50,896 bases of DNA from Macrostomum lignano (lineage: Eukaryota): positions 1 to 50,896 of the forward strand of contig NIVC01000541.1 of assembly GCA_002269645.1 (NCBI GenBank), given 5' to 3'. Below, in pieces: positions 2,426 to 48,127 of this stretch; the stretch's first letter is position 1; each line of letters opens with the position of its first letter. The notes under the pieces were generated by a model. That model worked only from the letters and a program-made list of their open reading frames with translations. It was not told the DNA's origin and made no database searches. The position numbers and the translations under genes are program-made.

Positions 2426-2750
2426 CGGTGGGTCAGCTCAGATTTTACACGTCTTTTGGTGCCTAAAGTGAAATTTTGTGGTCGTAACTTTAGGTTCGCT
2501 TGTACGAGCTATCGCGTATTTTTTTAAAATTATCTGAAACTCATGTTCTGTATCTGAGTTAAATATGCATATTTATTGCGTCAAACTTGTTAGAAATCAT
2601 CGTATTCCAAACTTTCAGAAAGTGAAACCAGTTTGACCTCATAGTTGACCTTACATGACCTCTGTGTGACACATTTTGCAAGTTGGGCTTTTCAACGCTT
2701 TTTGCACTAATTTATGAATCATAAGTGATCAATCTCGCTTCTTTCCCCAG

Positions 2751-4041
2751 AGCTTCTACAAAGACGCAGTGAACTTTTACTTTGACAGTCGAGTTGAGTG
2801 CAAGCACTTCTGGAAGAAGTGCATCGAGCATCACACCTTCTTCAGGTGCCAATCCGCCAGGCCGCTGCTCAGGGCGAGAAATAAAGTTGTGTCGAAAGGA
2901 TCCTCGTTCAGGTGTGTTGGCCTGAGCATTGCTGCTTTACCAGGCTATCAGATCCGAATATATAGGATTGATCTATTGAATCTATAGGATTGATCTATCG
3001 AATCTAGAGGATTGATCTATCGAATCTAGAGGATTGATCTATCGAATCTATAGGATTGATCTATCGAATCTAGAGGATTGATCTATCGAATCTATAGGAT
3101 TGATCTATTGAATCTAGAGGATTGATATATCGAATCTATAGGATTGATCTATCGAATCTAGAGGATTGATCTATCGAATCTATAGGATTGATCTATTGAA
3201 TCTATAGGATTGATCTATCGAATCTAGAGGATTGATCTATCGAATCTATTGGATTGTTCTATCGAATCTATAGGATTGATCTATCGAATCTACAAGACTG
3301 ATCTATCAAATCTTACAAGATTAATCTATCGAATCTATTGAATTGATCTATCGAATCTACAAGATTGATCTATCGAATCTATTGAATTGATCTATCGAAT
3401 CTACAAGATTGATCTATCGAATCTATTGAATTGATCTATCGAATCTACAAGACTGATCTATCGAATCTATTGAATTGATCTATCGAATCTACAAGATTGA
3501 TCTATCGAATCTATTGAATTGATCTATCGAATCTACAAGATTGATCTATCGAATCTATTGAATTGATCTATCGAATCTACAAGACTGATCTATCGAATCT
3601 AGAGGAGTGATTTTTGGAATCCATAAGAGTGAGATATGCCATGTCTATAAGAGCACTGACTGCGTCTGCATTGCAGCAGAAAACTCCCACAGCTGCAAGC
3701 AATCAATGAGAGTTCAAAGGACTGTTAGAAATTGGAAGCAGCTGTCTGTACGAGTTTAAGGATGCGACTTGCTGCCTTCGAGTTTCTTCACTGCCACAGG
3801 AATTGGTCTCAATGAAGTTTATAGGTGCGGAAAGCTGGGTTATAAACATGCGCATTGCATCTCTGACCCCCCCCCGCGCAGGTACTGCGGCCGAACCCAG
3901 AAGCAGCTGCTGGAATTCGTTCGGCAAAATTACTACATCAGGCGGCCCTGCCCCGACTGGTGAGGACCCCGGGGGGTGAAAGGACATTTCAGGGGAGTGA
4001 AGAGCTGCTCATTTTCTGGATTAGCTAATCCTGTGTCTTTT

Positions 4042-4083
<42 letters not shown>

Positions 4084-6497
4084 TTACTCCCTCTGTCTTT
4101 TAGAGGCTGCAAAGAGGATTTATGATCCCCATAGAATCTTTGCAAATTTTGAGCACTATGGGAGATTGTAGCAAAGTAGGCAGAGGCAGAGCTTATCCCT
4201 TCTCCCTCTCGCGCTCTGAATGCTGAGCTCGGACAAAGGAGAAAGACAGCGCGAAGCCGCATAGTAATTAGCAGTTTTGTAATTTTTATAATTTGCACCT
4301 GAAACTATTGTTGCTAGCTGACGTTGACGACTCGGTAGTCGATAGATTTATAATCTGTGAGAACAGACGGTGCATCATCCACATGTGTGAGATTGGATAA
4401 GTAGATATGTTAGAGTCGATGAGAATAGGCAGTGCAATATCTATGAGAACAGGCAGTGCAATATCTATGAGAACAGGCAGTGCAATATCTATGAGAACAG
4501 GCAGTGCAATATCTATGAGAACAGGCAGTGCAATATCTATGAGAACAGTCAGTGCAATATCTATGAGAACAGGCAGTGCAATATCTATGAGAACAGGCAG
4601 TGCAATATCTATGAGAACAGGCAGTCAGCAACATCCCAAAGTCAGTTTCGGTGGGGACAAACACGCAGCTCCCACCTGCCCTCTCCAGGAGCTCCCGCTC
4701 CTTGCCAAGTCGCTCGCCTGGAGGCGCCCGCCGCGCCACGACAATCACGTCGGCTACCGCGGCAGCCGCCATGGCCGCCGCTGCGACTCTCAGCGGCCGC
4801 GGCTCGCGGGCGGCGTCCACCGGGTCCCGCGGCTCGCACACCCTGCTGCCGCTGCACCCGCTGGAGCCGCCTACGCAGAAGCCGCTGATCTCGCCGCCAA
4901 CCTCGATGCCTCCGATGCCGATTTCCTGCGCCGACAAAGCTCGCTTCGCCGCCGACTTTGCGCGCCACGATGCCGTCGTTGCAGCAGCGGCGCCAAACCG
5001 GGCCGCCGCCGGTGCCGCCAAAGCCGCAGCAGCAGCAGCCGCTTCTGTCTTCGTCGCCGCCGCTCCCGCCACCGCCGTTGGACTTTGGACTTCATCGCTG
5101 ACACCGACGCCGATGTCGACGCCGCATGGCGACGCTGCAGGACGTCGTCGTTGCGCGCCCGCTCGCTGCCCGATCGTCGCGTCGAATACGGAGATGGATT
5201 TGACGGCTACGGCGAGGCCGACGGTGACGACGCTGACGGGTTCGGCGACTACGACGGTGAGGGTGCATCGACGCCGCCGCCATTGGAGTCGCTGGAGCGG
5301 CTGGCCAGCACGCAGGCCTACGTCAACAGCTGCTGCTGCCCGCCGCCGCCCGCGGTGCCTTCAGCGGCCGGCTGCCACCGCCTGGACGATCTGGACGAGC
5401 GCACACACCTGGCCGGCACGATGACATCGGATGAGGACGGCGACTTGGACGCGAACGTTGACAACGACGACTGGTGCGCTGGGATGCGCCGGCCGCGCTC
5501 CGTTAGCCGGCTGGAGAGCGCCCTGGCGACGCCCAAGACGGGCGGCTCGCTGGTCGAGCTGGACGCGATCGAGGACAACTACGGCGACACGGACGCCTGC
5601 CTGAACGGCTTCGAAGATGACAACGGCGAAGGAGGCCGGCAAGATAATGCTGCCGCCGTAGTCCAGGAGGATGACCGGATAGAGGCAGCAGCTGCAGCAT
5701 CTCCCCCGCCTTCGCCGGTTTCACCTCTGCCGGAAGAGCCAGCAGCCCCCGCCCCGAACTTCGCCTCGCCGGCTGTCGCGTGCAGCGTCTCCAGCCTGGC
5801 AGCCAGCGGCGCCGCGCTAAGCACCGTCAGCGAAGAGTCCGGCGCCTCCTCGACTACGTCGGCAACCACATCGTCGGCGTCAACAACGGCGGGCGCCAAT
5901 GTACATGCAGCTGCGACAGTCGCGACGGAAGCTTCAAATGCTGCGCCGGCTGCTGACACCGCCGACGGCGCGGCCAGGAGATCCGGCAGCGAGTCCTCGG
6001 CCGCCGGGTCCAACAGCGACAGCAGCCGGGAGCCGTCGGTGTCCAGCCAGCTGGAGCTGCGCCTGTGCCATAACACCACCGTCGGGGAGGTCATCGACGA
6101 AGGCGATGACATCAACGACGATTGCGAAGATGACGAGGAGGAGGAGGCATCGAACTACTACGAGGCCGAGTTCCTGTCACGCGCGGAAGGCCGCCGACGG
6201 CAGCGGCAGCAGCGGCGAATCCAGGCGGTGCAGCAGCGGGACGGGCCGCCGATCCCGCCGAGGTCCAGCAGCATGATCGCCAGTGGCGCCGTCGCTGACA
6301 CGTCATCGCTGCTGCCGCCGCCGCCCCCGGAGCTACTAGAGATGACTCAGCAGCTGGAACAGCACGAGCAGCCAGATCAGCAGCAACCGCCGCTGCCTCC
6401 GCCTGGCGCGGCTGCTGCCGCGTCGGCCACCGCCACCGACGCCGCCGCCTGCTTCGCCAACCCGTGGGCCCGGCTAGACGTTGGCAGCGAAGTATAA
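2751..6497 (+). CDS. FERM + FERM-adjacent domain protein (FARP/FRMD7-like), last three coding exons; 5' exons not found in window
   Basis: Exons 2751-2911 (CAG|, phase 0, SFYKDAVNFYFDSRVECKHFWKKCIEHHTFFR...SKGSSFR), 3882-3959 (YCGRTQKQLLEFVRQ...), 4689-6497 (low-complexity tail). All GT-AG with compatible phases. CKxFWKxCxEHHxFFR and GSSFRYxGRTQKQ are the FERM C-lobe end and FA motif. The tail needs a one-base frame switch near 5080-5095 (see findings). Confidence 0.85.
2957..3603. repeat. 22-bp minisatellite (aatctagaggattgatctatcg) in FERM intron
   Basis: Tandem array between exons 2751-2911 and 3882-3959. Confidence 0.9.
4044..4081. repeat. (CT)n microsatellite
   Basis: Direct reading. 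Confidence 0.9.
4416..4625. repeat. 24-bp minisatellite (atgagaacaggcagtgcaatatct)
   Basis: About 8.5 copies. Gives the intronic MRTGSAIS repeat at the start of ORF 4407. Confidence 0.9.
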
Positions 6498-9216: not shown

Positions 9217-12200
9217 CTAGTCGCGCCAGACCAGTGCCAGGCTGCGCTGCATGAAGCAGTACACATCGGCGCGCTCCTCGATGGTCTTATTCAGTGGCCG
9301 ACCGAATCCGTGCCCGTCTTTGGTCTCGATTCTGGCCAGCAGTGGCCGAGTTTGTCCGGGCCGGCTGCCCAGCCTGTACTGCACTTCGGCCACGAATTTC
9401 AAGCTGTGCAGCGCCATCACTCGATCGTCATGGCTGGCCGTCAGCACCAGCAGGGCCGGGAAGTCCGAGCCCCAGTCTGAACGGTCCGCCACCCGGGCCA
9501 CGTTGTGCAGCGGCGAGTAGGCGAAGACGTTGCGGAACTCCGACTTGCTGCCGTCCGGGGTGCCGTAGTCTGAGACCCAGCCGTGACCGATGGTGAACCT
9601 GGCGGAGAGACGGGTCCGTTCTGTACCTGAGACCAGCTAGATTAGCAATCCATTCTATTCCTGCATCCTTGTGGGCCAGATTAGCAATCCATTCTATTCC
9701 TGCATCCTTGTGGGCTAGATTAGCAATCCATTCTATTCCTGCATCCTTGTGGGCTAGATTAGCAATCCATTCTATTCCTGCATCCTTGTGGGCTAGATTA
9801 TCAATCCATTCTATTCCTGCATCCTTGTGGGCTAGATTAGCAATCCATTCTAATTCTGCATCATTGTGGGCTAGATTAGCAATCCATTCTATTCCTGCAT
9901 CATTGTGGGCTAGATTAGCAATCCATTCTATTCCTGCATCCTTGTGGGCTAGATTAGCAATCCATTCTATTCCTGCATCCTTGTGGGCTAGATTAGCAAT
10001 CCATTCTAATTCTGCATCCTTGTGGGCTAGATTAGCAATCCATTCTATTCCTGCATCCTTGTGGGCTAGATTAGCAATCCATTCTATTCCTGCATCCTTG
10101 TGGGCTAGATTAGCAATACATTTTATCTATTCATCGGTGGACTTTGATTCATCAAATTCATGATGGCCAAGCCATCAGTAGGCCAGTGCGCACTTGTGAA
10201 ATCGCAGCATATCCAGCACGCCCATGCTGCAGACCACGCCGGCGTACAGATCCGGGCGTTGCAGGGCGCAGGCGGCTACCAGAAGGCCGCCGTTGCTAGC
10301 GCCCTCGATGACCAGCTTGTCGGGCAGGGCGACGCCCTCCTTAACCAAGTACTCGGCTGCCGCAATGAAATCGTCGAAGCAGTTCTGCTTATTCATGAGG
10401 CAGCCGCCGAGGTGCCAGTCTTCGCCAAATTCATCGCCGCCTCGAATATTGGCTACGGCGAAGGCGCAGCGATAATTGCGCAGCAGAGGCAGCCGGTCGG
10501 TGCTGAAGTACGGCATAATGCTGATGTTGAAGCCGCCGTAGCCGTACAGCAGGCAGGGCGCCGGGCCTTCGAGATCCCGGTGACGGACGATGAACATGGG
10601 CACCCTGGTGCCGTCCTTCGATGTGTAGAACACCTGCGGGCGTTTGCGATTTTTATAGTGGCTACAGAATTTTCTAGGATATCAAATTGGGATCAATGAA
10701 CATAGGGATCTAGAATTGGGATCGGTGATCATAGGGATCTGGAATTGGGATTGATGATCATAGGGATCTAGAATTGGGATTGATGATCATAGGGATCTAG
10801 AATTGGGATTGGTGATCATAGGGATCTAGAATTGGGATTGGTGATCATATGGATCTAGAATTGGGATTGGTGATCATAGGGATCTAGAATTGGGATTGGT
10901 GATCATATGGATCTAGAATTGGGATTGGTGATCATAGGGATCTAGAATTGGGATCGGTGATCATAGGGATCTAGAATTGGGATTGGTGATCATATGGATC
11001 TAGAATTGGGATTGGTGATCATAGGGATCTAGAATTGGGATCTAGAATTGGGATTGGTGATCATATGGATCTAGAATTGGGATTGGTGATCATAGGGATC
11101 TAGAATTGGGATTGGTGATCATATGGATCTAGAATTGGGATTGGTGATCATAGGGATCTAGAATTGGGATCGATGATCATAGGGATCTAGAATTGGGATC
11201 TATGATCATAGGGATCTAGAATTGGGATCGATGATGATAGGGATCTAGAATTGGGATTGGTGATCATATGGATCTAGAATTGGGATTGGTGATCATAGGG
11301 ATCTAGAATTGGGATTGGTGATCATATGGATCTAGAATTGGGATTGGTGATCATAGGGATCTAGAATTGGGATCGATGATCATAGGGATCTAGAATTGGG
11401 ATCTATGATCATAGGGATCTAGAATTGGGATCGATGATGATAGGGATCTAGAATTGGGATCGATGATGATAGGGATCTAGAATTCGGATCGATGATCATA
11501 GGGATCTAGAATTGGGATCGATGATCATAGGGATCTAGAATTGGGATCGATGATCATAGGGATCTAGAATTGGGATCGGTGATCATAGGGATCTAGAATT
11601 GGGATCTATGATCATAGGGATCTAGAATGGGGATTGATGATCATAGGGATCTAGAATGGGGATTGATGATCATAGGGATCTAGAATTTGGACCGATGATC
11701 ATAGGGATCTATTGCAATAGAATTGGGATTGATGATCATCGAAGGATCTCGGGTTGGGATTTATGATCATAGGGATCTTGAACTATGATAATCGTTGAAG
11801 AATTAGGACCACGCTTCGAACAGTTAAGAGTGAATGCCAGGACACTGACTAGTTAGTCAATTATCAAACCTGTTTCTCCGTGTACTCAGACGCATCGAAT
11901 CCTTTTGGCGAAGACTTGCGCACCAGAGTGGTAGTAAAGTCCCCTTCGGGAGAAAACTCAACCCTGTACTGATTCGATGGCGTTAAGAAGCTGCTGTAGC
12001 TGAAGAACAACTCGTTGTGCCATCGTTCGCACGTAATGCTGCCCACTGTGCCCAGGCCGAATTCAATCTGCTTCCAAGCCTGCCGGTTCAGCAGATCCGT
12101 TACTAGCAGCACGTCCTGCACGTTGCGGCGATAGGACAGGATTAGGGAGCGGTTGACAACAGCTGCGGTGCTGAGCACGTCAGTCTCGTGCTGCGGCACC

Positions 12201-15023
12201 AGCTCGAGCCAGCGCATTGTGTCCAGGCAGAAAGTCACGATTCTGTGCGGAGAATAGAGTTAGGGAATGTGGTAGAATGGGTCATGCGTGCGTGTATGGG
12301 TTATAGATGCTTTATTGGGCCATGGTTGTCTTATATGGGTCATAAATGCCTAATATGCGTCATGGGCGTCTTGTATGGGTCATAGATGCTTAATATAGGT
12401 CATGGGTGTCTTATATGGGTCATAGATGCTTTATATGGGTCATGGGTGTTTTATATGGGTCATAGATGCTTTATATGGGTCATGGGTGTTTTATATGGGT
12501 CATAGATGCCTTATATGGGTCATAGATGCCTAATCTTGGTCATGTGTGCCTAATTTGGGTCATGTGTGCCTAATTTGTGCCTAAATATGTGCCTAAATAT
12601 GGACTATATGGAAAATAGGTACTCGTAGGTGCCTAATATGAGTTAAGGTCATGGGGCTGTCTAATGCGCATTATCTTAATCTAAGGCTACCATGCAATAG
12701 CCCGAATGAAAAATTAATGAGCTGACCTATTCCTAGGCGCTTCTCCGTTAGTCATCAGATAGAACAGCGGCCCATCATTAGTGATGTAATGATAGCTGCA
12801 GTCGAACGAGTCGGACACCACAGTGTAGGGCAGGGGGCCGCTGCCGGCGGCCACGCCATTCGGACAGTCCTTGGCCAATTGGCAGACGTGCAGCTGATTG
12901 GCCGGCTTGCACCCGTCGGTGAGGAAGATCAAAGCGTATTGGCCGCAATCGCTAACGCTGGCCGTGACAAGCCATTTCGGCGCGTCGGGGAATTCGGCGC
13001 ACAGCCGGTCCCGAGACTGCGGCTCGCCCAGCTTGTGGTACATCAGCTTGTGATTCAGATCGAGGTCGCCAGTGGCGCCGCCCTCCGACATGCGACCGTG
13101 CGGGTAGCAACTGTAGAACACGCCGGCGCCGTCCTCTGTCCAGGCCAGGCCGCTGAACTTCACCTTGTCCAACTGGTCGGGCAGATCTGAACCGTCCGCG
13201 ACGCGTTTGAATCGAATTGTCTTCCAGTCCAAGCCGCAGCTGGATTGGCAGTAGGCCATTACCGAGCCGTCCCGCGTCATCGACAGCTGATTGGGTTAGA
13301 GGAGAGTGATAGTGAGAACTACAAGAGTGACAGTGGGACAGCGGGAACGAGCTGAGTGACATTGCGAGCTAGGAGAGTGACATTGCGAGCTAAGAGAGTG
13401 ACATTGCGAGCTAGGAGAGTGACATTGGGAACAAGGAGAGTGACATTGGGAACAAGGAGAGTGACATTGGGAACTAGAATAGTGACATTGAGTACAAGGA
13501 GAGTGACATTAGGAACTAGAATTGTGACATTGGGAACAAGGAGAGTGACATTGGGAACTAGAATAGTGATATTGGGAACAAGGAGAGTGACATTGGGAAC
13601 AAGGAGAGTGACATTGGGAACAAGGAGAGTGACATTGGGAACAAAGAGAGTGACATTGGGAACTAGAATAGTGATATTGGGAACTAGAATAGTGATAATT
13701 GAGAACTAGAATAGTGACGTTGGGAACAAGGAGGGTGACATTGGGAACAAGGAGAGTGACATTGGGAACAAAGAGAGTGACATTGGGAACAAGGAGAGTG
13801 ACATTGGAAACAAGGAGAGTGACATTGGGAACAAGGAGAGTGACATTGGGAACAAGAAGAGTGACATTGGGAACAAGGAGAGTGACATTGGGAACAAGGA
13901 GAGTGACATTGAGAACAAAGAGAGTGACATTGGGAACAAGAATAGTGACATTGAGAACAAGGAGAGTGACATTGGGAACAAAGAGAGTGACATTGGGAAC
14001 TAGAATAGTGACATTGGGAACAAGGAGAGTGACATTGGAAACAAGGAGAGTGACATTGGGAACAAGGAGAGTGACATTGGGAAGAAGGAGAGTGACATTG
14101 AGAACAAGGAGAGTGACATTGGGAACAAGGAGAGTGACATTGGGAACAAGAAGAGTGACATTGGGAACAAGGAGAGTGACATTGGGAACAAGGAGAGTGA
14201 CATTGGGAACAAGGAGAGTGACATTGGGAACAAGAATAGTGACATTGAGAACAAGGAGAGTGACATTGGGAACAAAGAGAGTGACATTGGGAACTAGAAT
14301 AGTGACATTGGGAACAAGGAGAGTGACATTGGAAACAAGGAGAGTGACATTGGGAACAAGGAGAGTGACATTGGGAAGAAGGAGAGTGACATTGAGAACA
14401 AGGAGAGTGACATTGGGAACAAGGAGAGTGACATTGGGAACAAGGAGAGTGACATTGGGAACTAGAATAGTGACATTGGGAACAAGGAGAGTGGACATTG
14501 GGAACTAGAGAGGGACAAAATAGTAATTTCAATGACACAGAAAACAACACACAGCTTTACCTGGCCAATAGACACCGTGCCTTCTTCACTCATGGTGTTG
14601 GGATCCAGCAGCGTCCTCGACTCGCCATCGTAGGTGTCCCTGACTTTCAGCACCGACTGCGCCTGCAGGCCGGAATTGTACCAATAAAAATAGCGATCAC
14701 CTTCCCGGAAGTCCACCGAATACCTTGGATAATCTTTCAGATCGGTTAAGCACTGGCGCAGCTTCTCCCGATCTGGGCAGCCGGCCAAGTACTCAGACGA
14801 GATCTTATTCTGAGCTTCAACAAAACTTTTAGTGCCAGGACTGTCGCTGTCCTCCAGAGCCCGGTATGGGTCGCTGACTTTCACGCCAAAGAATTCGTCC
14901 ACAATGGACTCATCTCGGGGAGCATCGGGGTACTTAGGAAGGTTAGCCTGGAGTAGTGCAAGAATCGGAAGTGTCAAATATGCTTTAATAATATTATTTA
15001 AAATTTAATAATGCATAAACCAT
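9217..15023 (-). CDS. PREP: Prolyl oligopeptidase (peptidase S9A), about 714 aa
   Basis: Exons 14947-14561, 13286-12727, 12242-11870, 10633-10194, 9598-9217, all GT-AG and phase-compatible (713 codons plus stop). Tentative ATG-only first coding exon at 15023-15021 (ATG|GTTTAT, 73-nt intron). Motifs: [36 protein letters not shown], catalytic GASNGG (Ser), ASHDDRV (Asp), DGHGFG (His). Confidence 0.95.
9636..10120. repeat. 39-bp minisatellite in last PREP intron
   Basis: Unit gctagattagcaatccattctattcctgcatccttgtgg, about 12 copies. Confidence 0.9.
10670..11785. repeat. 29-bp minisatellite in PREP intron
   Basis: Unit gatcatagggatctagaattgggattggt. Confidence 0.9.
12275..12560. repeat. Degenerate ~20-22-bp minisatellite in PREP intron
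   Basis: Recurrent tatatgggtcatagatgc motif. Confidence 0.75.
13340..14510. repeat. 21-bp minisatellite in PREP intron with 294-bp higher-order duplication
   Basis: Unit gagagtgacattgggaacaag. The variant pattern recurs at 14-unit spacing. Confidence 0.9.
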
Positions 15024-17039
15024 ATTGATCAACTTCTTGAAATGAGCTTTGTAGTTAGTAGTCTAGAGTAAAAAAGCCTGGGTGTATACAGCTACTAAAC
15101 AATAAAACGAGTTTTATTTTTACACAAATAGCAATTATGTATTACATAAGGCTATTATTCTCTTAAATAGCCATAAATAGTTAAATAATAAATATAACTC
15201 CATCAAAAGTCAATCCGAAGTTTTCTGCCATAAGTCTTGCCAGATTGTAAAGAAATTACAATATATGGCAGTGATTATGAATTAAAAATATATTAAATGA
15301 TAGATTGGGGCTAATGAAAAATTAGTTATACCTCAACTAATATTACTTCATTAGGAAAATAAAGAAGCATATAGTATTTAGCAACAAAAAGTTTTTAGAT
15401 TTAGTTTTGATTATATTTTCGTACATGCAGAAAATAGTGCATCTTCTTTCTTTTCTTAGCATTTTTTGTTTTACTCAAAGGGTTTTTGCTGTAAACAATG
15501 CTAGCCAATGAAAGTACAGCCTTTATTATATTATTACACATAAAGGGATGAAACCAGGCACAATAAAATCAACTTTTGGAGTCTTTCAGTTTACTGCTAA
15601 AATTTGTTTGTCGTAAAAACTCTTTATCAGTTATTATATATAAGTAATGAGCAAAAAACTGAGTGGCAAAGCCAAATTTTTAGAATACTTAGAATTGAAT
15701 TGAATCAACAGAATACTCAGTTTCAACTAGAATTGAAAGTTGAGAATCAGAATACTAAATAGTCACTTTGATGTGGGGCAATGATTTGGAACAAGTCAAG
15801 AGTTGAGTATTGGTGTTGTGGCTTATAAATAAAGGAAAGGAATTAGGGAATTTTGGAATGAGAAGTTTGCATTTGAAGATTCAAGAGTTTTAGGGGTTGT
15901 AGGATTGTGGCTCATAAATGAGAGGGAATTTAGGATGGGATAATGTGGTACATCTTGAAGAAAGGCAGGGGTGCTTGAGTAGTCATGAGCACATTGTACT
16001 TAGATTGAGTACTAAGGCTTTAGGAGGCTTTACCACTTACACACATATAAGTTGCTATTGGCTGAGAGCAGTCAAGTGACTACTATTCTGTCCAATAGTG
16101 ACTTACATGTGTTGCCAATAGAAATAGAAATAGCTGCTCTGCTAATGGCAAGGCTTTATGGCAAGACACTTGCAGGTGTCCCATGTTTTTACTTTAGAGC
16201 AAACTTTTAAAATGCTGCATCCATTCTTTTAAGTTGCCTGCAATGAACAATCTATGGAAAACATTGTGGAATAAGTGCTATGCTACTTGTAAGTCAAGGC
16301 CACAGCTGTGAGTGACTTCTCTAAGCCTGTACATGTACACTATACACTGTGTCTACTGTACATTGGCAATGATACACATGCACAAACACTGTAAGCTAAT
16401 GGTGTCAGCACAACAACAGTCCTTTTCTGGTATATTGCCATCACAATGTGGACTAGCAGCTCTAGCAAGTTGTAGCCCCTCCCTTATACCCATTACACAA
16501 GGAATGATAGGACCACCTTTTAAAAGAGTTTAGAAATCATGGACATTTTAATTGGATCCAATATCATTTAGTCTTGGTCTAGTTGTGCTATTATTTATGT
16601 TGGTCCTGTATATATATATAATTGTTTTGAAAAAATAAAATGTAACACTTAGGCAGACAGTTATAAAATAATTTACTGATTTGAACTGTCTGTTCACTCA
16701 CAGAGCTTTATTAACTGTCTTATTTTCTATATCACACCGTATCTATTTTTAGTGGAAATCTATGTTAACTTCTTTCTATGTTTTTGTGTTAGCAATGCTG
16801 TATAGCAGATAGCTTTCTAAAACATGGATTTTTTCCTCTTAGTAAGGCAGATCTAATGACATTTGTCTTCATTTACCTACTTGACCTGTTGGACTATGTG
16901 CAGGGAAAATGCCACTGTAGAAATAAATACATGCTATTGTTGAATCTAAGATCTCAACCACTCAAGTGACGGTAATTATTGTGGAATAAGGCTTCCTTTT
17001 ATTATATTTGTAATATTGTACTTAATAATATCAATATAA

Positions 17040-19297
17040 CATCAAGTATGTCTTTGGAATTGTATTAGAGATCTTAGAGAATGCAAGTGCTATATGGTGC
17101 GACATGGATGCTATCAATCATTTTGCCTTGGTGGCCTAGTCTGGCTGCTTGGCCATTGGCAATAAGCCAAATATGATCTGCCATTTCAGAAACAGTCTAG
17201 CTGCTGCAGTGACCATTGCTTGGTTTCGGCCTGCAGGCTAGTCAGTAAGGTGCAGTGTGGCTTCTATGTGCCAGGCAAGGCTGGACCAGCCCAAGTAGCA
17301 TGGGCTATAGCTCATGGCAGAAGTAGCTGAGAAACTACTGCTAGGCAGTCAGTCTAGGATGGGGCTGATGAGGGCTATGACCTAGAAAAGCAGAAATGGT
17401 TTAAGCAGTGCCTCAAAGGTAGGCTGACCCTAGCCCCAGCAGACAAATAGGGTAGGGCTAGACTGCAAGAACTTCTAAGTTGAGGACACACTCATAGGCT
17501 AGGCAAAGGCATATCAGGATATAACACATGTCCTGGCCAAACCCTCCTGGCATGCGTCCAATATTGCTATGAGCCAGATCCCGAGAGGTCTAGAATGAAT
17601 TTACTTACTGCCTGAAGTATGGCAACTTGCTATCTAGTATCTAAGAAGTATACCCCAAGCCAGGTCCAAGCAGCTGTGGAAGCGGGCAGCCACTGTGGGG
17701 CCCTAGTAGTGGTAATGGCAGCTAAGGCTGAAAATACCAAGCCAGAAGGTAAAGCGCATGAGACTTTCTCGCACAACGTAACCCAAGAGATGAATATGCA
17801 GATAGACCATGCTATTAACCGCCTGTCAAAGTACATGCTAGAGCCAAGCATCAGGCGCACTACCAACCAGCTAGAGAAGACATTCCACAATATTGCCATG
17901 CAGACTGCCCCCACAGGTGACAACCCATGCTGCTACATGGTCATAGTGTCCAGCGACATAGTGGGCTGGAGCCCCAATAGGGACTGAAAGCTTATGACTA
18001 GCCATCACCTGGAGATAGTCAAAATGACCAAGCTGGGCCCTCAGTGGGACCTCCAAAGGCTATGGAAAGATTTTGTGATAACTATAAACAAGCACAGTGT
18101 GACTTGTCAGCAGTTCAAAACCATGGCATGTTCCAGGGCTAGACACCAATGGCTGACACACTGTACCATTCCAACATGCTTAGCTACATCATAAAGACTG
18201 CAAAAGAATGCTTGATCCTGGCTGAGAAAGAATATGCTACTGTTCTCTGCCTGATTGATGATGTAGTGCTAGCTGTGCCCATCTTAAGGCCAAGGGCTAA
18301 GGCCCCGGAGACTGCTGCAGACCAGTTCTACTGCCATGTCATAGACATGTATGCATATCTGGGCTATGTAGTGGAGATTTCAAAGACAATATATAGTAGC
18401 ATTAACTTCATATACCTGAATAGCCATTTTGTAGGAAGCAGTGAAGTGCTGTGCCCCATTAAATTTTGTGCAAAAGCAGACAACGAGTTCACAAGATGGT
18501 TCTACAGCTTAACTGACCAGTAGCATTCAGTATTCAATAGCTATGCTAGTGCTATAGCCAAGGGTGCAGATCCCATGGCATGCTACTTCTTAGCACTACG
18601 CAGAAGCATTGACCTATGAATGCAGACTGCTGACAAAGACTTCTGCAGGAAAGCCAAGCCAATGTGTGCTACTGCCTTTGTGCTGCTCAGCTTAAGGGGG
18701 CCTTGGTTTCCCAACATTTGGAGGGTTCTGCATAAAAGAGACCCTGGATCTGCTTAGCACATTTATCTAGGCCATCTAAAACCAAGTTTGCCGCAGCAGA
18801 GACCTAGTAAAATGAGCTAGCTAGGCTAGCCAGCTGGCCAAAGTATTTGGCTAGCCACTTGAGGAGCCAAGACTCAGGACCTACATATAGAACACAGCAA
18901 ATGTCTACGCTACAGGTGTGCTAGACCCCTTTGCCCCAGTGAAAAGAGAGCTAACAAAGGCACTTAGGAAATTTGCAATGGCTGCAGAGTTTAGAGATAT
19001 ATTCTCAATCCATGTACAAAAGCCTAGCATAGAGTTGGAGAGAGTAATCAAGGAGGATTGCAAGTGGGACCCACATATGCTGGCCGAGCTAGCAGAGTAC
19101 ACCCTGGCTGCCATGGTAGATGCGCTTGTTGCCTACTAGAATATGTAAATAATGAGTCGCTAGCTTACCTGCTGCCCTTTTGGAAGCAACAGAAAGAGGG
19201 GCTGGAAGTCTGCAGACTCAACACTAGCCAAGCCAAGTTTTTACTTCAGAAGCTACTATGCAGGCTACAGAAAGACCAGCTAATTGACTCGCCCTAG
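17040..19297 (+). pseudogene. Endogenous viral element: decayed L/RdRp of a negative-strand RNA virus, qinvirus-like
   Basis: Collinear polymerase motifs: F KAENTKPEGKAHETFS, A SSDIVGWSPN, B HGMFQG*TPMADTLYHS, C LCLIDDVV, D LGYVVEISKTIYS, E FIYLNSHF. In-frame stops at 17985, 18140 and 18521, and a frameshift near 18120. Further decayed coding-like sequence on both sides; outer limits approximate. Confidence 0.85.
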
Positions 19298-21099
19298 TTA
19301 ATATATAAAGAACCATTTTAAACTGAAAAAAACTAACCTGCACTTTGCACTCTTGCTTCTGCAAGCTCTCAAGCTATAACAGCTCAATTTTTAATATAGC
19401 TAGGTTTAAAAGGAACTCTTATCATGTTGGTTATTTTAAGGAAACACTAAGGGCTCATAGAGACCCTAGCTAAGCATTAAGTTACATATTAGGCATAAGA
19501 CTAAATATTAGGCTTCAGGCTTAAGAATTAGGCATAAATATTAGGCTAGGTATTAGGTGACAAGATTAGATATTAAATATTAGAAAATAAGGCTCATTGC
19601 TAGAAACCTCAGCATTCTTTTGTTTTACGATCACCTAGCATTGTCCCTATAGGAGTTGGCACTTTTGTTATATGATCCCCCCCACAGAGAATGGAAAATT
19701 GCTCTTAAAATTGAACTTCAAAATGGGACCACTTCTAAGTGTGTCATTTTAACATAAAATCTTGTGTCTTATAGAAGTTAGAAGCCTGTCCTTATATTCA
19801 CTTTCATTATGCGATCATTTAAATGGTGAATTTATATGCAGATGATCGCAAGACAAAACCAAAAGAGCTTGTAGATTTTGACTTACAATCACACCAATAG
19901 TAAAATTGTATTGGAGGGATCGTATGATGAAATAGTAGGAAATTGTCGCTATAATAGACATTTCAACCAAACAATCAATTGCAGCCTCTAATATGTTCGT
20001 GAACCTACGTGCTTTCATAACTAATGCTATGTCCACAATCCTCAAGTTGACTAGAAAATGAGTTGCAATGATTTTGTTCTTGGAAAATAAATGTGAAATG
20101 TACTTTTTTGATAAACTAGAGTATCTTTTTTACTCTTTTTTAATGGGGATTGTCAGACAAAAAATGATCTGCTCAGGGATTGTAAAACAAAAGAATGCCG
20201 AAACCCCTTGATCTACAGAAATACTATACTTTTGGACATAGCTTAGTTAGGATGTTAGACAGTGTCTTACCACTTGGGCACTAATCACTCCCATGAGATT
20301 TCTAAGATATCAAGTGAATTAGGAATTTTCCAAGAAAGATTTTTAATTTAGTGATAAGTAGGGCCTAATATGAATTTAAATAGGCCTAGGTAGCAGTTCT
20401 TAGTAGAACAACTTAGTAGAAGCAGTAGGATCTCATAGAAGAGAGGTTCTCCCTAGCACAACTTGGCAACTGCAGTGGGATAGAGTAGCAAATAGAAAAA
20501 AGAACTGCTACACTATACTATACAAAAAAGTTTAAACATTCCTAAATATAATATTAGTGATAAATATATTGATGTCCAAGTCTAACATTGCCTAAAAAGC
20601 TTAGTAGGGCCTAACTATATATATTTATGTAACTATATGTTTTCTACATTTTAAGACCATACAAATTAGTTTAGGAATAGAATAACTATAGGCCTACAAA
20701 GTTAACCAATAAGCCTTTAGCCTAGTTACAATTTCAACAATCAATCAGGCTTGAATTTAGAAATAGGCATTACAAATGTCAAATAACTTAATATTAATAA
20801 GTTAAGTATAAATATTATATTGGTATTAACTTAACGGCCTTAGGGTAAAAACCTTACAGAGAGAAAGATCCAACAAAGATATTACTTCAACCAAAGATTT
20901 AATTAAAACTATGAAATAGGCTGTATAAAGTAATTTATTTAAACTGGTACCTTTAATAAAAGAAACACTAAGGCTTGTATAATGCAGTATTAGAGCACAG
21001 TAGCAAAACGAGCTTTTTGCTCTTTCCCTGCTAGATGGAGCAAGTTTCTCTGCGTTTTCCCGTCGAGGCGGTAGGGTATAGGTAGGGTATAGAATGTCG

Positions 21100-23556
21100 C
21101 AGCCTGGTTGGGCTATGCCGCTATGGAATTATACTTAAACTGGTCAGCAACCACCGATGATCAAACTGGTGCTATTATACAAAAAATTGTAATAACCTAA
21201 ATATATACTACTTTAAAAATGTTTTTTACTGATACATTCAAAATTTAAAATATTTTTTTATTAAAAAATAACTTTTGCAATGGTAAAGCTAGATTTGTTT
21301 AAGCAAAAAAGTATATTTATTAACTATTCAAATGAATCAAAACGAGCGCTGTCGATGGAAAATCCATCGAAAACGAATATACTAAAGAAACTGGAAAGCA
21401 TAGACTTAAAACCACTAACTGAAGTCAAGATAAACTTTCCCAAAGCTTTAATAACGAGAAATACCTAATGAAAAAGCACCTCAGGATACACAGAGAAAGA
21501 GAACTTAGCCAAAAGCTAGAGAATCAGCAACATATTAAACTCTACAAAAACGCCTATCTCTACAAAAAAATCTGCAGGCCTGACCTTTCAGATTACTTTC
21601 CATGCACATTTAGAAACAAAAAATTCCTAACAACCCTCCTAAAACTGAAATGTGAGATTACACCCAACATTTTTTCTCAAGAAGCATGTAGACTGTGTGG
21701 AGCGAGAAATGGTTCAGATATCCTACACTACTTGACCGAATGTCCACAAACTGAAGAGATCAGAAAAAAATACTTCTGTCAATACCTCTTAAATGACAAA
21801 CAAATACACAACACGAGATAGGATATGCTACAAATGAAAAAAGAGTCAGAAAAGAGCTCACTGGTGTAGCTAAAATATATGAAGTCATGAATAGCTAAAA
21901 CAGTCATGCAAACTGAAACAGATACATCAGCAGTGTAATAAATCCGCTTTTCAGTTGTTTATTCATTTACTGTCTTTTTTAATTCCCTATTTAATTCGTC
22001 GTTAATCGTTAGACGTTAAGTTCGTTCGAAGTGTGTTTATGCTCGTTTTTTCACGCTTTGAAATATCACGCGCTTTCAAAAATACTATATCTTTTTACAA
22101 AAATCGCCTATTATTGAGAACAATCCTTAATTATACTAGATATTTGTTATATTGACAAAATAATATTGAACTACCTTTTCTGAATCGCATTTTCATAGAA
22201 GAATCGTTTTGCATTAAGGTCATATATATACAACATCGATTTTCGGTAAGGGGTACAACACTACCCGAAAAATGGGGTAAAAGGCTACCCGATGATTTTA
22301 GGCGTCTACCCGCTTCAAATCGTCCAGAAAATGCGCCTAACCTATGCAGCTTCAAGTGTGGAATTTTTTTAGGTGAAAAACTGAAAGATTATGATGAAAT
22401 TCACGTTTATTTTTGTTGGTAGTGTTTTACTCCAAAAAGCTACCCAAAACTACCCGACCCCTACCCCCGTCATTGAGAATCGAAAATCAATAGCTAAGCT
22501 TACTTTTACATCTTCTGCCATAATGTATAATATCAAGTGGTTTTAACGTGTATGAGCAAAGTTAGGGTAATGGGTAATTTGTTTTACTGTATTTTACTTT
22601 CGCATTTTTAACAGGCATTTTCGTTTACGTTTGACTTAGTTATTGTGTAGCCCGATAAGCTAGCGTAAGGTGCAAACTAATATTAAAGCATCGTTTTTTA
22701 GTTGCATGATGCATAGTATAGAAAATAAATTACCTCTAATAGAGGCCTCGTGAAATTCACTTCACGTGACAGTGAAATTCACTTTGAATTGAGGCAAAAA
22801 TATACCGAGCCTCTATTAGAGTTAATTTATTTTCTATACTATGCATCAACTAAAAAACGATGCTTTAATATTAGTTTGCACCTTACGCTAGCTTAACGGG
22901 CTACACAATTTAACTAGCTAAGTCAAACGTAAACGAAAATGCCTGTTAAAAAATGCGAAAGTAAAATACAGTAAAACAAATTACCCATTACCCTAACTTT
23001 GCTCATACACGTTAAAACCACTTGATATTATACATTATGGCAGAAGATGTAAAAGTAAGTTTAGCTATTGATTTTCGATTCTCGATGACGGGGGTAGGGG
23101 TCGGGTAGTTTTGGGTAGCTTTTTGGAGTAAAACACTACCAACAAAAATAAACGTGAATTTCATCATAATCTTTCAGTTTTTCACCTAAAAAAATTCCAC
23201 ACTTGAAGCTGCATAGGTTAGGCGCATTTTCTGGACGATTTGAAGCGGGTAGACGCCTAAAATCATCGGAAAGCCTTTTACCCCATTTTTCGGGTAGTGT
23301 TTTACCCCTTACCTCGATTTTCTATTTTTCCTGTTAGTCGTTAATCGGCTGAAAAAAAACCGTAAAAAAAATTCCAGACGCTCTTTTAAATACCTTACTT
23401 AATACAAATATCGTAACTCGTTTTCAGCGAGTTGGCAAGTTCAGCAAAAATTTAACCTTTTGAATAAATACTAATTACTAAATACATCGGATTATACTGG
23501 CATAACAGGCTCCTTAAGCCTGAGCCAAATTTACTACTACTACTACTACTACTACT
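21100..23556 (+). mobile_element. 3' fragment of a non-LTR retrotransposon, interrupted by the palindromic element
   Basis: Broken ORF 21280-21821 ends in the ORF2-type CCHC knuckle CRLCGARNGSDILHYLTECP. A (TAC)8 tail at 23532-23556 may be its 3' end. The 5' limit is approximate. Confidence 0.55.
22245..23313. mobile_element. Non-autonomous Mutator/foldback-type palindromic element
   Basis: ~500-bp near-identical inverted arms (22245-22745 / 22808-23313), ~60-bp spacer, termini GGTAAGGGG...CCCCTTACC, exact 9-bp TSD tcgattttc (22236-22244, 23314-23322). Confidence 0.9.
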
Positions 23557-29400: not shown

Positions 29401-30104
29401 CTTGAGAGCAAGCTGCAAACAAGTTGTTCTTTCTTCTATAACTTTGCTCCTATTTATACTAAATTTATAAAAAAAATATAAACTGAGAATATTTTGTACA
29501 TTATAACAAAATATATTTTGTGCAAATTTAAAAGTAGGCTTTCCTAGAAACATTAGTAACTTGTTTTTTAAAACTAAAAAAAGATTCAATTTTCATTGAA
29601 GCTTTTTGTAAAGTTTAATTTTAGAAATATATGTGGCCTAGCTGAAATTATGTTTAAAGACTAGGCTAAGTTATTGTAAAGACTCTAATAAGATTTTCTT
29701 CGTATCAATTGAAATATCTCAATTTAGACATATTTCTTATTTACTAGTACTAACCTTATTATTAAATATTTATGCAAGAGCCAGCCAACTAGAACACTGC
29801 TAGGGATGCAGCCCTTGTGCCACAGCTGGGCTGGCATGCCAACACCCTCTAGCTAAGCTCGCCACAAAGTGCACCAGGCCCTAACTAAGAAATGCACAAG
29901 AATAATGCCAAAATTTGGTGCATTTGTTAAATTGTACAAAAGCATTGTATACCAAGTAATTTTATAAATATGGTTTCTATTATAATTTTACAAGTTGAAA
30001 TATATGGATGTTGGAGTTTACAATGATGACCTGATGTCAAAACATTATAATGCCGGAAATGCCCCCTCATTGTTCATGGTATTATTGCTACAATATTGTA
30101 AACA

Positions 30105-32154
30105 ATGGGCCTGCCCTGCGGTGGATTCACCTGTACTAAAACTGCTCTAACTGTGCTCAATGGTGTCTTCATGCTAGTTGCTATAGCCCTGATGGCTCTG
30201 GCTGGCTATTCTCGCATGGCCGCCGTTGTGACCAGCATCAATATCCTGTCTGGCCTCATCGTGTGCGGAGTGTTTCTCTTCTTTGTCAGCTTGCTGGGGT
30301 TGCTTAGCGCTCGTCTGCACAACCAAGTAAGTTTTTATTCACCTTAGGCTTTCTGTCAATTCTGGCTGCATCGCATCGTTGTAAAATAACCAAGACTCCT
30401 AGACTCTCAGTTGCTGGGCCAGCCTCCCCAATCCTCTGTTGCTGGGCCAGCCTCCCAGATCCTCAGTTGCTGAGCCAGCCTCCCAGACTCTCAGTTGCTG
30501 GGCCAGCCTACCAGACTCTCAGTTGCTGGGCCAGCCTCCCCGATCCTCTGTTGCTGGGCCAGCCTCCCAGATCCTCAGTTGCTGGGCCAGCCTCCCAGAT
30601 CCTCAGTTTCTGGGCCAGCCTCCCAGATCCTCAGTTGCTGGGCCAGCCTCCCAGATCCTCAGTTTCTGGGCCAGCCTCCCAGATCCTCAGTTGCTGGGCC
30701 AGCCTCCCAGATCCTCAGTTTCTGGGCCAGCCTCCCAGATCCTCAGTTGCTGGGCCAGCCTCCCAGATCCTCAGTTTCTGGGCCAGCCTCCCAGATCCTC
30801 AGTTGCTGGGCCAGCCTCTCAGATCCTCAGTTGCTGGGCCAGCCTCCCAGAGTGTCAGTTGCTGGGCCAGCCTCCCAGATCCTCAGTTTCTGGGCCAGCC
30901 TCCCAGATCCTCAGTTTCTGGGCCAGCCTCCCAGATCCTCAGTTTCTGGGCCAGCCTCCCAGATCCTCAGTTGCTGGGCCAGCCTCCCAGATCCTCAGTT
31001 GCTGGGCCAGCCTCCCAGATCCTCAGTTTCTGGGCCAGCCTCCCAGATCCTCAGTTGCTGGGCCAGCCTCCCAGATCCTCAGTTGCTGGGCCAGCCTCCC
31101 AGATCCTCAGTTGCTGGGCCAGCCTCCCAGATCCTCAGTTGCTGGGCCAGCCTCCCAGATCCTCAGTTGCTGGGCCAGCCTCCCAGAGTGTCAGTTGCTG
31201 GGCCAGCCTCCCAGATCCTCAGTTTCTGGGCCAGCCTCCCAGATCCTCAGTTTCTGGGCCAGCCTCCCAGATCCTCAGTTGCTGGGCCAGCCTCCCAGAT
31301 CCTCAGTTGCTGGGCCAGCCTCCCAGATCCTCAGTTGCTGGGCCAGCCTCCCAGATCCTCAGTTTCTGGGCCAGCCTCCCAGATCTTCAGTTGCTGGGCC
31401 AGCCTCCCAAATCCTCAGTTGCTGGGCCAGCCTCTCAGATCCTCAGTTGCTGGGCCAGCCTCCCAGATCCTCAGTTGCTGGGCCAGCCTCCCAGATCCTC
31501 AGTTGCTCACCCACCGCCGCTCTCCCAAATCTTAATGCTCATCAAGCGCCAATCTCCTAAACTCAGACTGTGCCAATGTCCTAGTGTCACATATATGACT
31601 ACTTTCAGTAGGCCTATATCAGCAGAATCCTTAAGTCTAATTAGTCGCCCAAATGCCGCCCCGGAATCGCGCAGGCCATGCTGTTCTTCTACATAATCGT
31701 GCTATTCCTGCTGTTCCTGCTGCAATTCGCCATCGCCTGCGCCTGCTTAGCGGTGAACTCCAGCCAGCAGGAGACCATACTTGAGGCGGCCTGGGGCCAG
31801 CTTGGCAATTATAGCCGTGCTGACGCCCAGCGCCTGTTCCAGTGCTGCGGCTTCCGCAACCCAATGCAGCTGGACGAGCCGCTGGGCCATCCGCCGTGCG
31901 CTCCGCTGGCCTGCTGCTCCGGCAGCGCCAGCCTGTGCTGCACTGGCAACCTGAATTCTACAGCCAATCTCGGCCTAGCCTGCCCGTGCCAGCTCAACTG
32001 CCTGACCGCCACCAAGGCTAAGTTTAATCGGGCCGCCAAACTCACTGGCAGTGTTGGCCTGCTGGTGTCCTTTGCCGAGATTGCGGGCGTCTGGCTGGCC
32101 ATCCGCTATCGCAATCTCAAGGATCCTCGGGCTGATCTGTCTGCTTTTCTTTGA
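30105..32154 (+). CDS. TSPAN13/31: Tetraspanin of the TSPAN13/TSPAN31 subfamily, 233 aa
   Basis: Exon 1 30105-30326 (CAA|GTAAGT), exon 2 31675-32154 (CAG|GCC), phase 0. N-terminal CGGFTC, four hydrophobic segments, CCG motif in the large loop, C-terminal RYRNLKDPRADLSAFL matching the subfamily tail RxRNxKDPRAxxSAFL. Confidence 0.93.
30395..31510. repeat. 28-bp minisatellite in tetraspanin intron
   Basis: Unit cagttgctgggccagcctcccagatcct. Stop-free on +, hence three long false ORFs. Confidence 0.92.
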
Positions 32155-47816: not shown

Positions 47817-48127
47817 TAAGTGAACTCCTGTGAGACTCGTATCTTGTAGTCTCTATAAGTTGATTTGAGTCCTAATTTTGATATGCAGTTCTAAAAGTTC
47901 ATCTTTAAGTTCTTGCAATAAAAACTATGAATCGATCATTTGATTTGGGATAGGGTAGCAGCAGTTTCAATTGAATTTAATGTGGCAGCTAAAAGAGGAT
48001 GTGAACTTAAGCGCGATTTGGAAGCCGTGAGTCCAGCAACCAAACCGCTGCGAAATTCTCACTATTCAGACCCAAAATAGACAAGAAAAGCGTAATTGAT
48101 CTTTCTTCCACCCCGGCCGCTTCCGCA

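What the first reader, a model, noticed from the sequence alone, without database searches (positions are those of the whole stretch)
17040..19297. Fossil qinvirus-like RNA virus polymerase integrated in an animal chromosome
Seen: joining three broken ORFs gives all RdRp palm motifs in order and at plausible spacing. F KAENTKPEGKAHETFS; A SSDIVGWSPN; B HGMFQG (restored by a 1-nt frameshift near 18120, then TAG 18140); C LCLIDDVV; D GYVVEISKTIYS; E FIYLNSHF; then RWFYSLTDQ*HSVF...GADPMACY. Established, from memory: Mononegavirales use GDN and bunya/orthomyxoviruses SDD in motif C, while IDD is typical of Qinviridae (Muvirales), a poorly sampled group of invertebrate viruses. Inference: an old endogenised L-gene fragment recording past infection of this host lineage by a deep-branching negative-strand virus. 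It lies among retrotransposon debris that could have supplied the reverse transcriptase.
Basis: partly seen in the sequence, partly recalled or inferred. Interest (0 to 1): 0.9.

Follow-up and report, generated by a model that had tools for sequence, protein, structure and literature searches.

The report
Fossil qinvirus-like polymerase fragment in animal DNA
A broken 1.8-kb piece of the polymerase gene of a qinvirus-like negative-strand RNA virus sits between ordinary animal genes, a genuine viral fossil of a kind already reported from a few arthropod genomes.

Summary
A single-frame read of window 18104-18757 (stops marked X) finds 121 proteins at E<=1e-3 among 1.84 billion. The best scores 1.9e-27. 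Every named hit is an RdRp of Qinviridae or of a qin-like virus.

A profile of 45 full-length relatives matches only the + strand, 17364-19133. That equals positions 459-1045 of about 1817, the RdRp core. Motifs F, A, B, C (IDD), D and E lie on the family's conserved columns.

The fragment lacks both ends of the gene. It carries at least 2 frameshifts and about 13-15 in-frame stops, with no large internal indel.

It forms a GC island about 2.4 kb upstream of an apparently intact prolyl oligopeptidase gene. A tetraspanin gene lies on its other side. It is therefore an endogenous viral element in a metazoan genome.

Not supported: the 'retrotransposon debris'. I found no RT or integrase domain, no target-site duplication and no poly(A). 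The host species could not be identified.

Qinvirus-derived EVEs are already published (ants, bristletails), so this is a new member of a known kind.

The parts
17364..19133 (+). Fragment of a qinvirus-like L (RNA-dependent RNA polymerase) gene. It corresponds to profile positions 459-1045 of about 1817. It is broken by truncation at both ends, at least 2 frameshifts and about 13-15 in-frame stops. There is no large internal insertion or deletion.
   Evidence: Profile hmmsearch of six-frame fragments. tblastn chains with 73 full-length relatives. phmmer against 1.84 billion proteins.
17724..18586 (+). RdRp catalytic (palm) motif block within the fragment. It holds motifs F, A, B, C (IDD), D and E and the downstream G..P...Y column set, in the order and spacing of qin-like polymerases.
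   Evidence: Per-frame alignment to 45 relatives. Invariant columns of alignment A2.
17100..19330 (.). Compositional island (GC 0.43-0.51 against 0.26-0.35 in the flanks). It gives the probable full extent of the inserted DNA. Its outer roughly 200-260 bp on each side have no detectable homology.
   Evidence: Composition profile. No profile match outside 17364-19133.
9220..15004 (-). Neighbour: host prolyl oligopeptidase (PREP) gene. Five open exons cover the whole Peptidase_S9_N and Peptidase_S9 profiles, and its introns are filled with minisatellites. Its 5' end lies about 2.4 kb from the viral fragment, in divergent orientation.
   Evidence: Pfam. About 50% identity to mammalian PREP in PDB, E = 1.4e-46. 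Tandem repeats.
30102..32151 (+). Neighbour: two exons of a host tetraspanin gene, about 11 kb downstream of the viral fragment.
   Evidence: Pfam PF00335.

Best explanation
This is a non-retroviral endogenous viral element (EVE). At some time, RNA of a qinvirus-like negative-strand virus (order Muvirales, Qinviridae or a close relative) was copied into DNA in the germline of an animal. The RNA was the L segment or its mRNA. The copy became inserted in the intergenic region upstream of the prolyl oligopeptidase gene.

Only an internal third of the L gene, the RdRp core, is detectable. Since insertion it has decayed as non-coding host DNA, so it encodes no polymerase today.

What is shown: the viral origin, the family-level affinity, the extent, the pseudogenisation, and physical continuity with host genes in this assembly.

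What is inferred: germline integration by a host or retroelement reverse transcriptase, or by non-homologous joining of a cDNA. No hallmark of the mechanism survives. Also inferred is an age of roughly 0.1-0.2 substitutions per site, estimated from the stop density. If the element has any present activity, it would be as RNA (for example a small-RNA template, as known for arthropod EVEs). That was not tested.
For: Similarity:
- 121 hits at E<=1e-3, best 1.9e-27, to proteins of 1600-2000 aa matched at about residues 700-900.
- Every named hit is a Qinviridae or qin-like RdRp.
- The nearest relatives sit on 5.6-5.8 kb contigs with one intact ORF. That is the L-segment size given by ICTV (PMC10721934).

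Extent and motifs:
- Profile matches are collinear and confined to 17364-19133 on the + strand.
- Motifs F to E, including IDD, fall on conserved columns.

Decay:
- The tblastn frame order is 3,2,3, and the longest chains carry 13-15 in-frame stops.
- The span is 1770 nt against 1761 expected.

Setting:
- A GC island stands in AT-rich flanks.
- Host PREP, tetraspanin and FERM exons lie on the same stretch.

Precedent:
- Comparable broken qin-like RdRp fragments occur in other DNA assemblies.
- Such elements are also reported in the literature (PMC6540820, PMC6955108).
Against: - No target-site duplication above chance and no A or T run of 8 or more.
- No RT or integrase domain in the scanned parts of the window. 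The integration mechanism is therefore unsupported by direct traces.
- Junctions rest on one assembly. No read-level evidence is available.
- The host species is unidentified.
- Tree placement has weak bootstrap support and no outgroup.
- Neither the window pieces nor a profile of the qin-like L proteins matches any Pfam or PDB entry significantly. The RdRp identity therefore rests on database names, motif conservation and the literature. The only meaningful weak PDB matches are mononegaviral L proteins (E = 0.1 and 0.85).
Confidence: 0.9

Rival explanations
1. Assembly chimera or contamination. Sequence from an exogenous qin-like virus present in the sample was wrongly joined into a host contig.
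For: Junctions were not verified at read level. The segment differs sharply in GC from its flanks. No integration hallmarks were found.
Against: The segment carries at least 2 frameshifts and 13-15 stops, and it covers only a third of the gene. That is not what a replicating RNA virus looks like. RNA viruses are also not expected in a DNA assembly. The nearest relatives, by contrast, have single intact ORFs. Host genes lie on both sides within 2.4 and 11 kb.
Confidence: 0.03
2. A genuine EVE, but derived from a lineage outside Qinviridae proper. The source would be an unclassified sister group within Muvirales or Haploviricotina that shares the IDD triad.
For: Identity to every known relative is only 25-40%. 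NJ placement has 5-27% bootstrap support and no outgroup was available. Qin-like viruses with IDD also occur in fungi, oomycetes and trypanosomatids.
Against: In both pieces the nearest sequences are classified or invertebrate-associated Qinviridae, namely Beihai sesarmid crab virus 4, Hubei qinvirus-like virus 1 and OKIAV112. Identity to them (28-38%) equals or exceeds the median among qin-like viruses themselves (29-32%). The fungal and trypanosomatid members are more distant.
Confidence: 0.12
3. The fossil is not merely inert. It is retained as a source of antiviral small RNAs or as part of the regulatory region of the adjacent prolyl oligopeptidase gene.
For: It lies about 2.4 kb upstream of the PREP coding start in divergent orientation. 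From established knowledge, arthropod EVEs often yield piRNAs. This is inference only.
Against: There are no expression or small-RNA data. The decay level is what neutrality predicts. No promoter or conserved element was tested. The protein-coding reading is excluded by the breaks.
Confidence: 0.12
4. A chance resemblance to polymerase motifs, or a cellular or transposon protein.
For: Pfam, PDB and the word-indexed protein search found nothing for the pieces.
Against: E = 1.9e-27 in 1.84 billion proteins, with 121 collinear hits that, where named, are all viral RdRps. The negative Pfam result is explained. Of five qin-like L proteins scanned, four have no Pfam match and one a sub-threshold PF00946 match.
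Confidence: 0.01

Closest known systems
L proteins (RdRp) of Qinviridae, genus Yingvirus, and unclassified qin-like viruses. Examples: Beihai sesarmid crab virus 4 (YP_009330273.1), Hubei qinvirus-like virus 1 (YP_009337847.1), Collembolan qin-related virus OKIAV112 (QMP82146.1).
   Same: Collinear similarity over the RdRp core. The motif F-A-B-C-D-E columns are shared, including the IDD triad. Identity of 28-40% lies within the spread seen among members of the group.
   Different: Only about a third of the gene is present, it is broken many times, and it lies in DNA. No close exogenous relative exists among about 15 billion proteins (best 38-40% over the core), so the donor lineage is unsampled.
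Published qinvirus-derived EVEs: Camponotus floridanus EVE7 (PMC6540820), a Qinvirus-clade EVE in the bristletail Machilis, and arthropod EVEs noted by Shi et al. 2016 (as cited in PMC6955108).
   Same: RdRp-derived fragments of the Qinvirus clade in animal genomes, fragmentary, and with no retroposon reported nearby in basal hexapods.
   Different: I could not compare sequences because these EVEs are not held by the tools. The host here is unidentified and may or may not be an arthropod.
Other broken qin-like RdRp fragments found here in DNA assemblies: L005 (GCA_964197005.1, OZ077899.1), L006 (ENA ERZ25070786) and L004.
   Same: They cover the same gene region, with multiple frames or in-frame stops. 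L005 and L006 also have non-viral genes beside the fragment (a Sushi-domain gene and an rve integrase respectively).
   Different: No nucleotide similarity to the window, so they are independent insertions and not orthologues.
Mononegavirales L polymerase EVEs (for example rhabdovirus- or chuvirus-like L fragments in arthropods)
   Same: The same class of fossil and the same polymerase superfamily. The only meaningful weak PDB matches of the qin profile are mononegaviral L proteins.
   Different: Motif C is IDD, not GDN. PF00946 does not match the window pieces. All significant hits are qin-like.

Membership tests
Qinviridae / qin-like (Muvirales) L polymerase, as donor of the fragment | Significant sequence similarity to L proteins of classified Qinviridae | tested here: met
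   Best E = 1.9e-27. Hits include Yingvirus beihaiense and Y. xinzhouense members.
Qinviridae / qin-like (Muvirales) L polymerase, as donor of the fragment | IDD triad in RdRp motif C (against SDD in Yueviridae and GDN in Mononegavirales) | tested here: met
   IDD in the window lies on a column set that is invariant in 18 relatives and at least 85% conserved in 45. Literature: PMC11417338.
Qinviridae / qin-like (Muvirales) L polymerase, as donor of the fragment | Motifs F, A, B, D and E on the family's conserved columns, collinear | tested here: met
   32 of 43 highly conserved columns are retained in the two main pieces.
Qinviridae / qin-like (Muvirales) L polymerase, as donor of the fragment | Phylogenetic nesting within the family relative to outgroups | tested here: inconclusive
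   Per-piece NJ trees place it beside invertebrate-associated Qinviridae. Bootstrap support is 5-27% and no outgroup was available.
Qinviridae / qin-like (Muvirales) L polymerase, as donor of the fragment | Full L architecture (about 1800 aa, RdRp plus PRNTase) and a second segment encoding N | tested here: inconclusive
   Only profile positions 459-1045 are present, and nothing matches 1-458 or 1046-1817 anywhere in the window. That is expected for a fossil fragment. No N-protein comparator is held by the tools, so an N-derived element was not searched for.
Non-retroviral endogenous viral element (EVE) | Virus-derived sequence physically continuous with host genes | tested here: met
   PREP lies 2.4 kb away, tetraspanin 11 kb away, and a FERM exon further off, all on the same 50.9-kb stretch. 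This holds at assembly level only.
Non-retroviral endogenous viral element (EVE) | Loss of coding capacity consistent with evolution as host DNA | tested here: met
   At least 2 frameshifts, 13-15 in-frame stops, and truncation at both ends.
Non-retroviral endogenous viral element (EVE) | Junctions confirmed by reads or PCR; presence in the germline of the species or in related species | not testable with these tools
   No reads, and no eukaryotic genome collection. The host was not identified.
Non-retroviral endogenous viral element (EVE) | Traces of retroelement-mediated insertion (target-site duplication, poly(A), adjoining retroelement). These are typical, not obligatory. | tested here: not met
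   The longest shared edge repeat is 9 nt, as in shuffles. There is no A or T run of 8 or more. No RT or integrase domain was found.
Mononegavirales L polymerase | GDN(Q) motif C and a match to Pfam PF00946 | tested here: not met
   Motif C is IDD. The pieces have no Pfam match.
Retrotransposon reverse transcriptase or a cellular protein | Match to RT or another cellular family | tested here: not met
   No Pfam family matches. All named hits are viral RdRps.

The most novel reading that the evidence does not exclude
The host may turn out to lie outside the groups so far linked to qinviruses (decapods, insects, gastropods, nematodes) and outside the arthropods in which qin-like EVEs are published. 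The fossil would then be direct genomic proof that an unsampled qin-like lineage infected the germline of that animal group. That matters because, by one recent account (PMC11108086), only trypanosomatids are experimentally confirmed hosts of this family. If orthologous copies exist in related species, it would also give the family a minimum age.
Probability: 0.25. Interest if true: 0.55.

Novelty: new member of a known kind. Interest (0 to 1): 0.4.

Why it matters
Qinviridae are known almost only from metatranscriptomes. Their virions and replication are unknown, and their true hosts are mostly unknown too (PMC10721934, PMC11108086). A decayed polymerase fragment fixed in animal chromosomal DNA is host-linked evidence that sequence surveys cannot give. 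It shows that a relative of these viruses once replicated in germline cells of this animal lineage. It also samples a lineage with no close living representative in about 15 billion proteins.

There is a practical point as well. Neither the fragment nor four of five intact qin-like L proteins match any Pfam family, and the fifth gives only a sub-threshold match. A word-indexed search also missed the fragment. Routine domain-based EVE screens will therefore overlook such elements.

Tried and rejected
- Pfam scan of the individual open pieces: nothing relevant.
- phmmer of the pieces against PDB sequences: nothing, or a chance match.
- Word-indexed search of 5.8 billion proteins: no hit. Only the exhaustive HMMER search worked.
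- Profile of 18 qin-like L proteins against PDB: nothing at E<=0.01. The weak top hit is a mononegaviral L.
- Host identification: exact-protein look-ups of four window ORFs, a homologue search with a PREP exon, Rfam and tRNA scans, and a literature search for the 161-bp satellite. All were empty.
- Literature look-up of the run and assembly accessions of the relatives: empty.
- Search for retroelement domains in open fragments of at least 55 aa: none. The scans omitted fragments that are 30% or more tandem repeat and 16 fragments right of about 47.3 kb.
- Flanking direct repeats, target-site duplication and poly(A): none above chance.
- Further L-gene parts or second copies elsewhere in the window: none.
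- A weak frame-2 profile match overlapping the first main piece was treated as spurious, because tblastn chains run through that stretch in one frame.

Full report
**1. What is in the sequence**

The + strand between about 17.3 and 19.2 kb holds a run of short open stretches in two alternating frames. The longest are 122 and 124 codons. I read each frame only as it stands, with stops marked X for search tools. I never joined frames.

The standard shortcuts failed:
- Pfam had no match.
- PDB sequences gave none.
- The word-indexed search of 5.8 billion proteins gave none.

The exhaustive HMMER search gave a clear answer. The query was the single-frame read 18104-18757, searched against 1.84 billion representatives. 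It found 121 proteins at E<=1e-3 and 63 at E<=1e-10, and the best scored 1.9e-27. Most hits are 1600-2000 aa long and match at about residues 700-900.

**2. What the relatives are**

Every hit that carries a name is an RNA-dependent RNA polymerase of a qinvirus or qin-like virus:
- Collembolan qin-related virus OKIAV112
- Beihai sesarmid crab virus 4
- Hubei qinvirus-like virus 1
- Xinzhou nematode virus 3
- Diaporthe helianthi qinvirus 1
- Obscuromonas Qin-like virus

NCBI taxonomy places the three I looked up in Negarnaviricota; Chunqiuviricetes; Muvirales; Qinviridae. The best, unnamed hits lie on 5.6-5.8 kb contigs from sequencing-run assemblies. Each has one intact ORF of 1824-1878 codons filling the contig. 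That is the L-segment size given by ICTV, 5.6-6.6 kb (PMC10721934).

Four of five qin-like L proteins scanned have no Pfam match, and the fifth has only a sub-threshold PF00946 match. This explains the negative Pfam result for the window.

**3. Extent**

I built a profile from 45 full-length relatives (1817 positions) and searched it against all six-frame open fragments of the window. It matches only the + strand, 17364-19133, collinearly over profile positions 459-1045. Domain i-E-values reach 2.4e-38.

Nothing in the window matches positions 1-458 or 1046-1817, and there is no second copy. tblastn with 73 full-length relatives gives the same bounds.

A GC island of 0.43-0.51, against 0.26-0.35 in the flanks, runs from about 17100 to about 19330. 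It suggests the insert is about 2.2 kb, with edges too diverged to recognise.

**4. Motifs**

Aligned frame by frame to the relatives, the window pieces carry the family's conserved columns in the right order and spacing. These are motif F (K.ENTK...K..ET.S), A (S.D...WS), B (G..QG.....D), C (IDD), D (K), E (S...LN.....G) and a downstream G..P...Y.

The first main piece keeps 17 of 26 columns conserved at 85% or more. The second keeps 15 of 17. The same columns are invariant in an 18-sequence alignment. The IDD triad is described as the qin-type motif C, in contrast to SDD in Yueviridae (PMC11417338).

**5. State of the gene**

One gene is represented, L. It is broken in these ways:
- It is truncated at both ends, and about a third of the ORF remains.
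- It has at least two frameshifts (tblastn frame order 3,2,3).
- It has about 13-15 in-frame stops along the longest chains, 6-7 of them in the best-conserved part.
- It has no large internal insertion or deletion. The span is 1770 nt, against 1761 nt expected for the profile span.

One short stretch towards the 3' side is ambiguous as to frame, so the frameshift count is a minimum.

By rough inference, about 4% of single-base changes in sense codons create stops. The observed stop density then corresponds to about 0.1-0.2 substitutions per site. That is old, but it cannot be dated without the host's rate or orthologous loci.

**6. Placement**

I made separate neighbour-joining trees for the two main pieces. 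Each used only columns where that piece has residues. Both put the window sequence next to invertebrate-associated Qinviridae (P0001, P0003, Beihai sesarmid crab virus 4, Hubei qinvirus-like virus 1, OKIAV112). The fungal and trypanosomatid qin-like viruses are further away.

Identities to the closest relatives and the named Qinviridae are 28-40%, against a median of 29-32% among the relatives themselves. Bootstrap support is weak (5-27%) and I had no outgroup. Assignment to the qin-like radiation is firm. Nesting inside the family proper is probable but not proven.

**7. Surroundings**

The window is minisatellite-rich eukaryotic DNA. Its recognisable genes are:
- A prolyl oligopeptidase gene on the - strand. 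Five open exons (9220-15004) cover both Pfam domains end to end. It is about 50% identical to mammalian PREP (E = 1.4e-46). Its 5' end is about 2.4 kb from the viral fragment, in divergent orientation.
- Two tetraspanin exons downstream, at 30102-32151.
- A FERM_C exon upstream, at 2718-2984.

This is a metazoan gene set, so 'animal chromosome' is reasonable. I could not name the species.

**8. Mechanism**

The accepted route for such fossils is reverse transcription of viral RNA by a cellular retroelement enzyme, followed by insertion in the germline. Here that remains inference:
- No reverse-transcriptase or integrase domain occurs in any open fragment of at least 55 aa that was scanned. The scans omitted fragments that are 30% or more tandem repeat and 16 fragments right of about 47.3 kb.
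- No target-site duplication exceeds chance, and there is no A or T run of 8 or more.
- No flanking repeats were found.

A study of basal hexapod EVEs likewise reported no retroposon beside them (PMC6955108).

**9. Rivals**

- A chimeric assembly is very unlikely. The segment is heavily pseudogenised and partial, unlike the intact relatives.
- A chance or cellular origin is excluded.
- A donor just outside Qinviridae remains possible (about 0.12).
- A present role as a small-RNA template or regulatory DNA is untested.

**10. Known or new**

Qinvirus-clade EVEs are already reported:
- Arthropod EVEs in Shi et al. 2016, as cited in PMC6955108.
- Camponotus floridanus EVE7 (PMC6540820).
- The bristletail Machilis.

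One lies beside a Sushi-domain gene in GCA_964197005.1. One lies on a 22.9-kb contig with an integrase gene. None is similar to the window at nucleotide level.

The finding is therefore a new member of a known kind. Its value lies in host evidence for a family whose hosts are largely unconfirmed (PMC11108086). It also samples an otherwise unseen lineage.

**11. Housekeeping**

All searches, alignments and trees used single-frame pieces as they stand. The local profile file was deleted after use. The outputs printed consensus lines of the relatives of their own accord. I neither copied nor used them.

Noticed in passing
window 9220-15004 (-): An apparently intact prolyl oligopeptidase gene in five large exons. 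Each of its four introns holds a minisatellite array (periods 39, 29/58, 20/40 and 21 bp).
   Followed up: partly
window 2718-2984 (+) and 4407-6497 (+): A FERM_C exon (E = 3.5e-8). Another fragment, not localised, matched the FERM-adjacent (FA) domain. Just downstream lies a 696-codon, 61% GC open frame with no Pfam match. It might be a large exon of the same gene.
   Followed up: partly
window 30102-30344 and 31645-32151 (+): Two tetraspanin exons separated by a 28-bp minisatellite array (30406-31507).
   Followed up: partly
window 22558-23000: A nested set of near-perfect inverted repeats (arms of 38-63 nt, 97-100% complementary). Together they form one roughly 440-bp foldback, like a foldback or MITE-type element.
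   Followed up: no
window 48127-48651 and 50239-50896; also 41474-41607 and 42144-42347: Two arrays of a 161-bp satellite in opposite orientation flank about 1.6 kb. Likewise, two arrays of a 14-bp unit lie in opposite orientation about 540 bp apart. A literature search for the 161-bp unit found nothing.
   Followed up: partly
window 15750-16500: A second, weaker GC rise (0.38-0.41) with strong positive GC skew lies between the PREP 5' end and the viral fragment. It has no protein match. It could be the PREP promoter or 5' UTR, or unrelated.
   Followed up: no
L005 4067-5506 (GCA_964197005.1, OZ077899.1); L006 7316-10828 (ENA ERZ25070786); L004 3-914: Other qin-like polymerase fragments in DNA assemblies, split over several frames or carrying stops. 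One lies beside a Sushi-domain gene and one lies on a contig with an rve integrase. They look like independent EVEs of the same virus group in other genomes.
   Followed up: partly
proteins P0001, P0007, P0008, P0010, P0014: Four of five full-length qin-like L proteins have no Pfam match, and the fifth has only a sub-threshold PF00946 match. A profile of 18 of them finds no solved structure. The family lacks both a domain model and a structural reference.
   Followed up: yes
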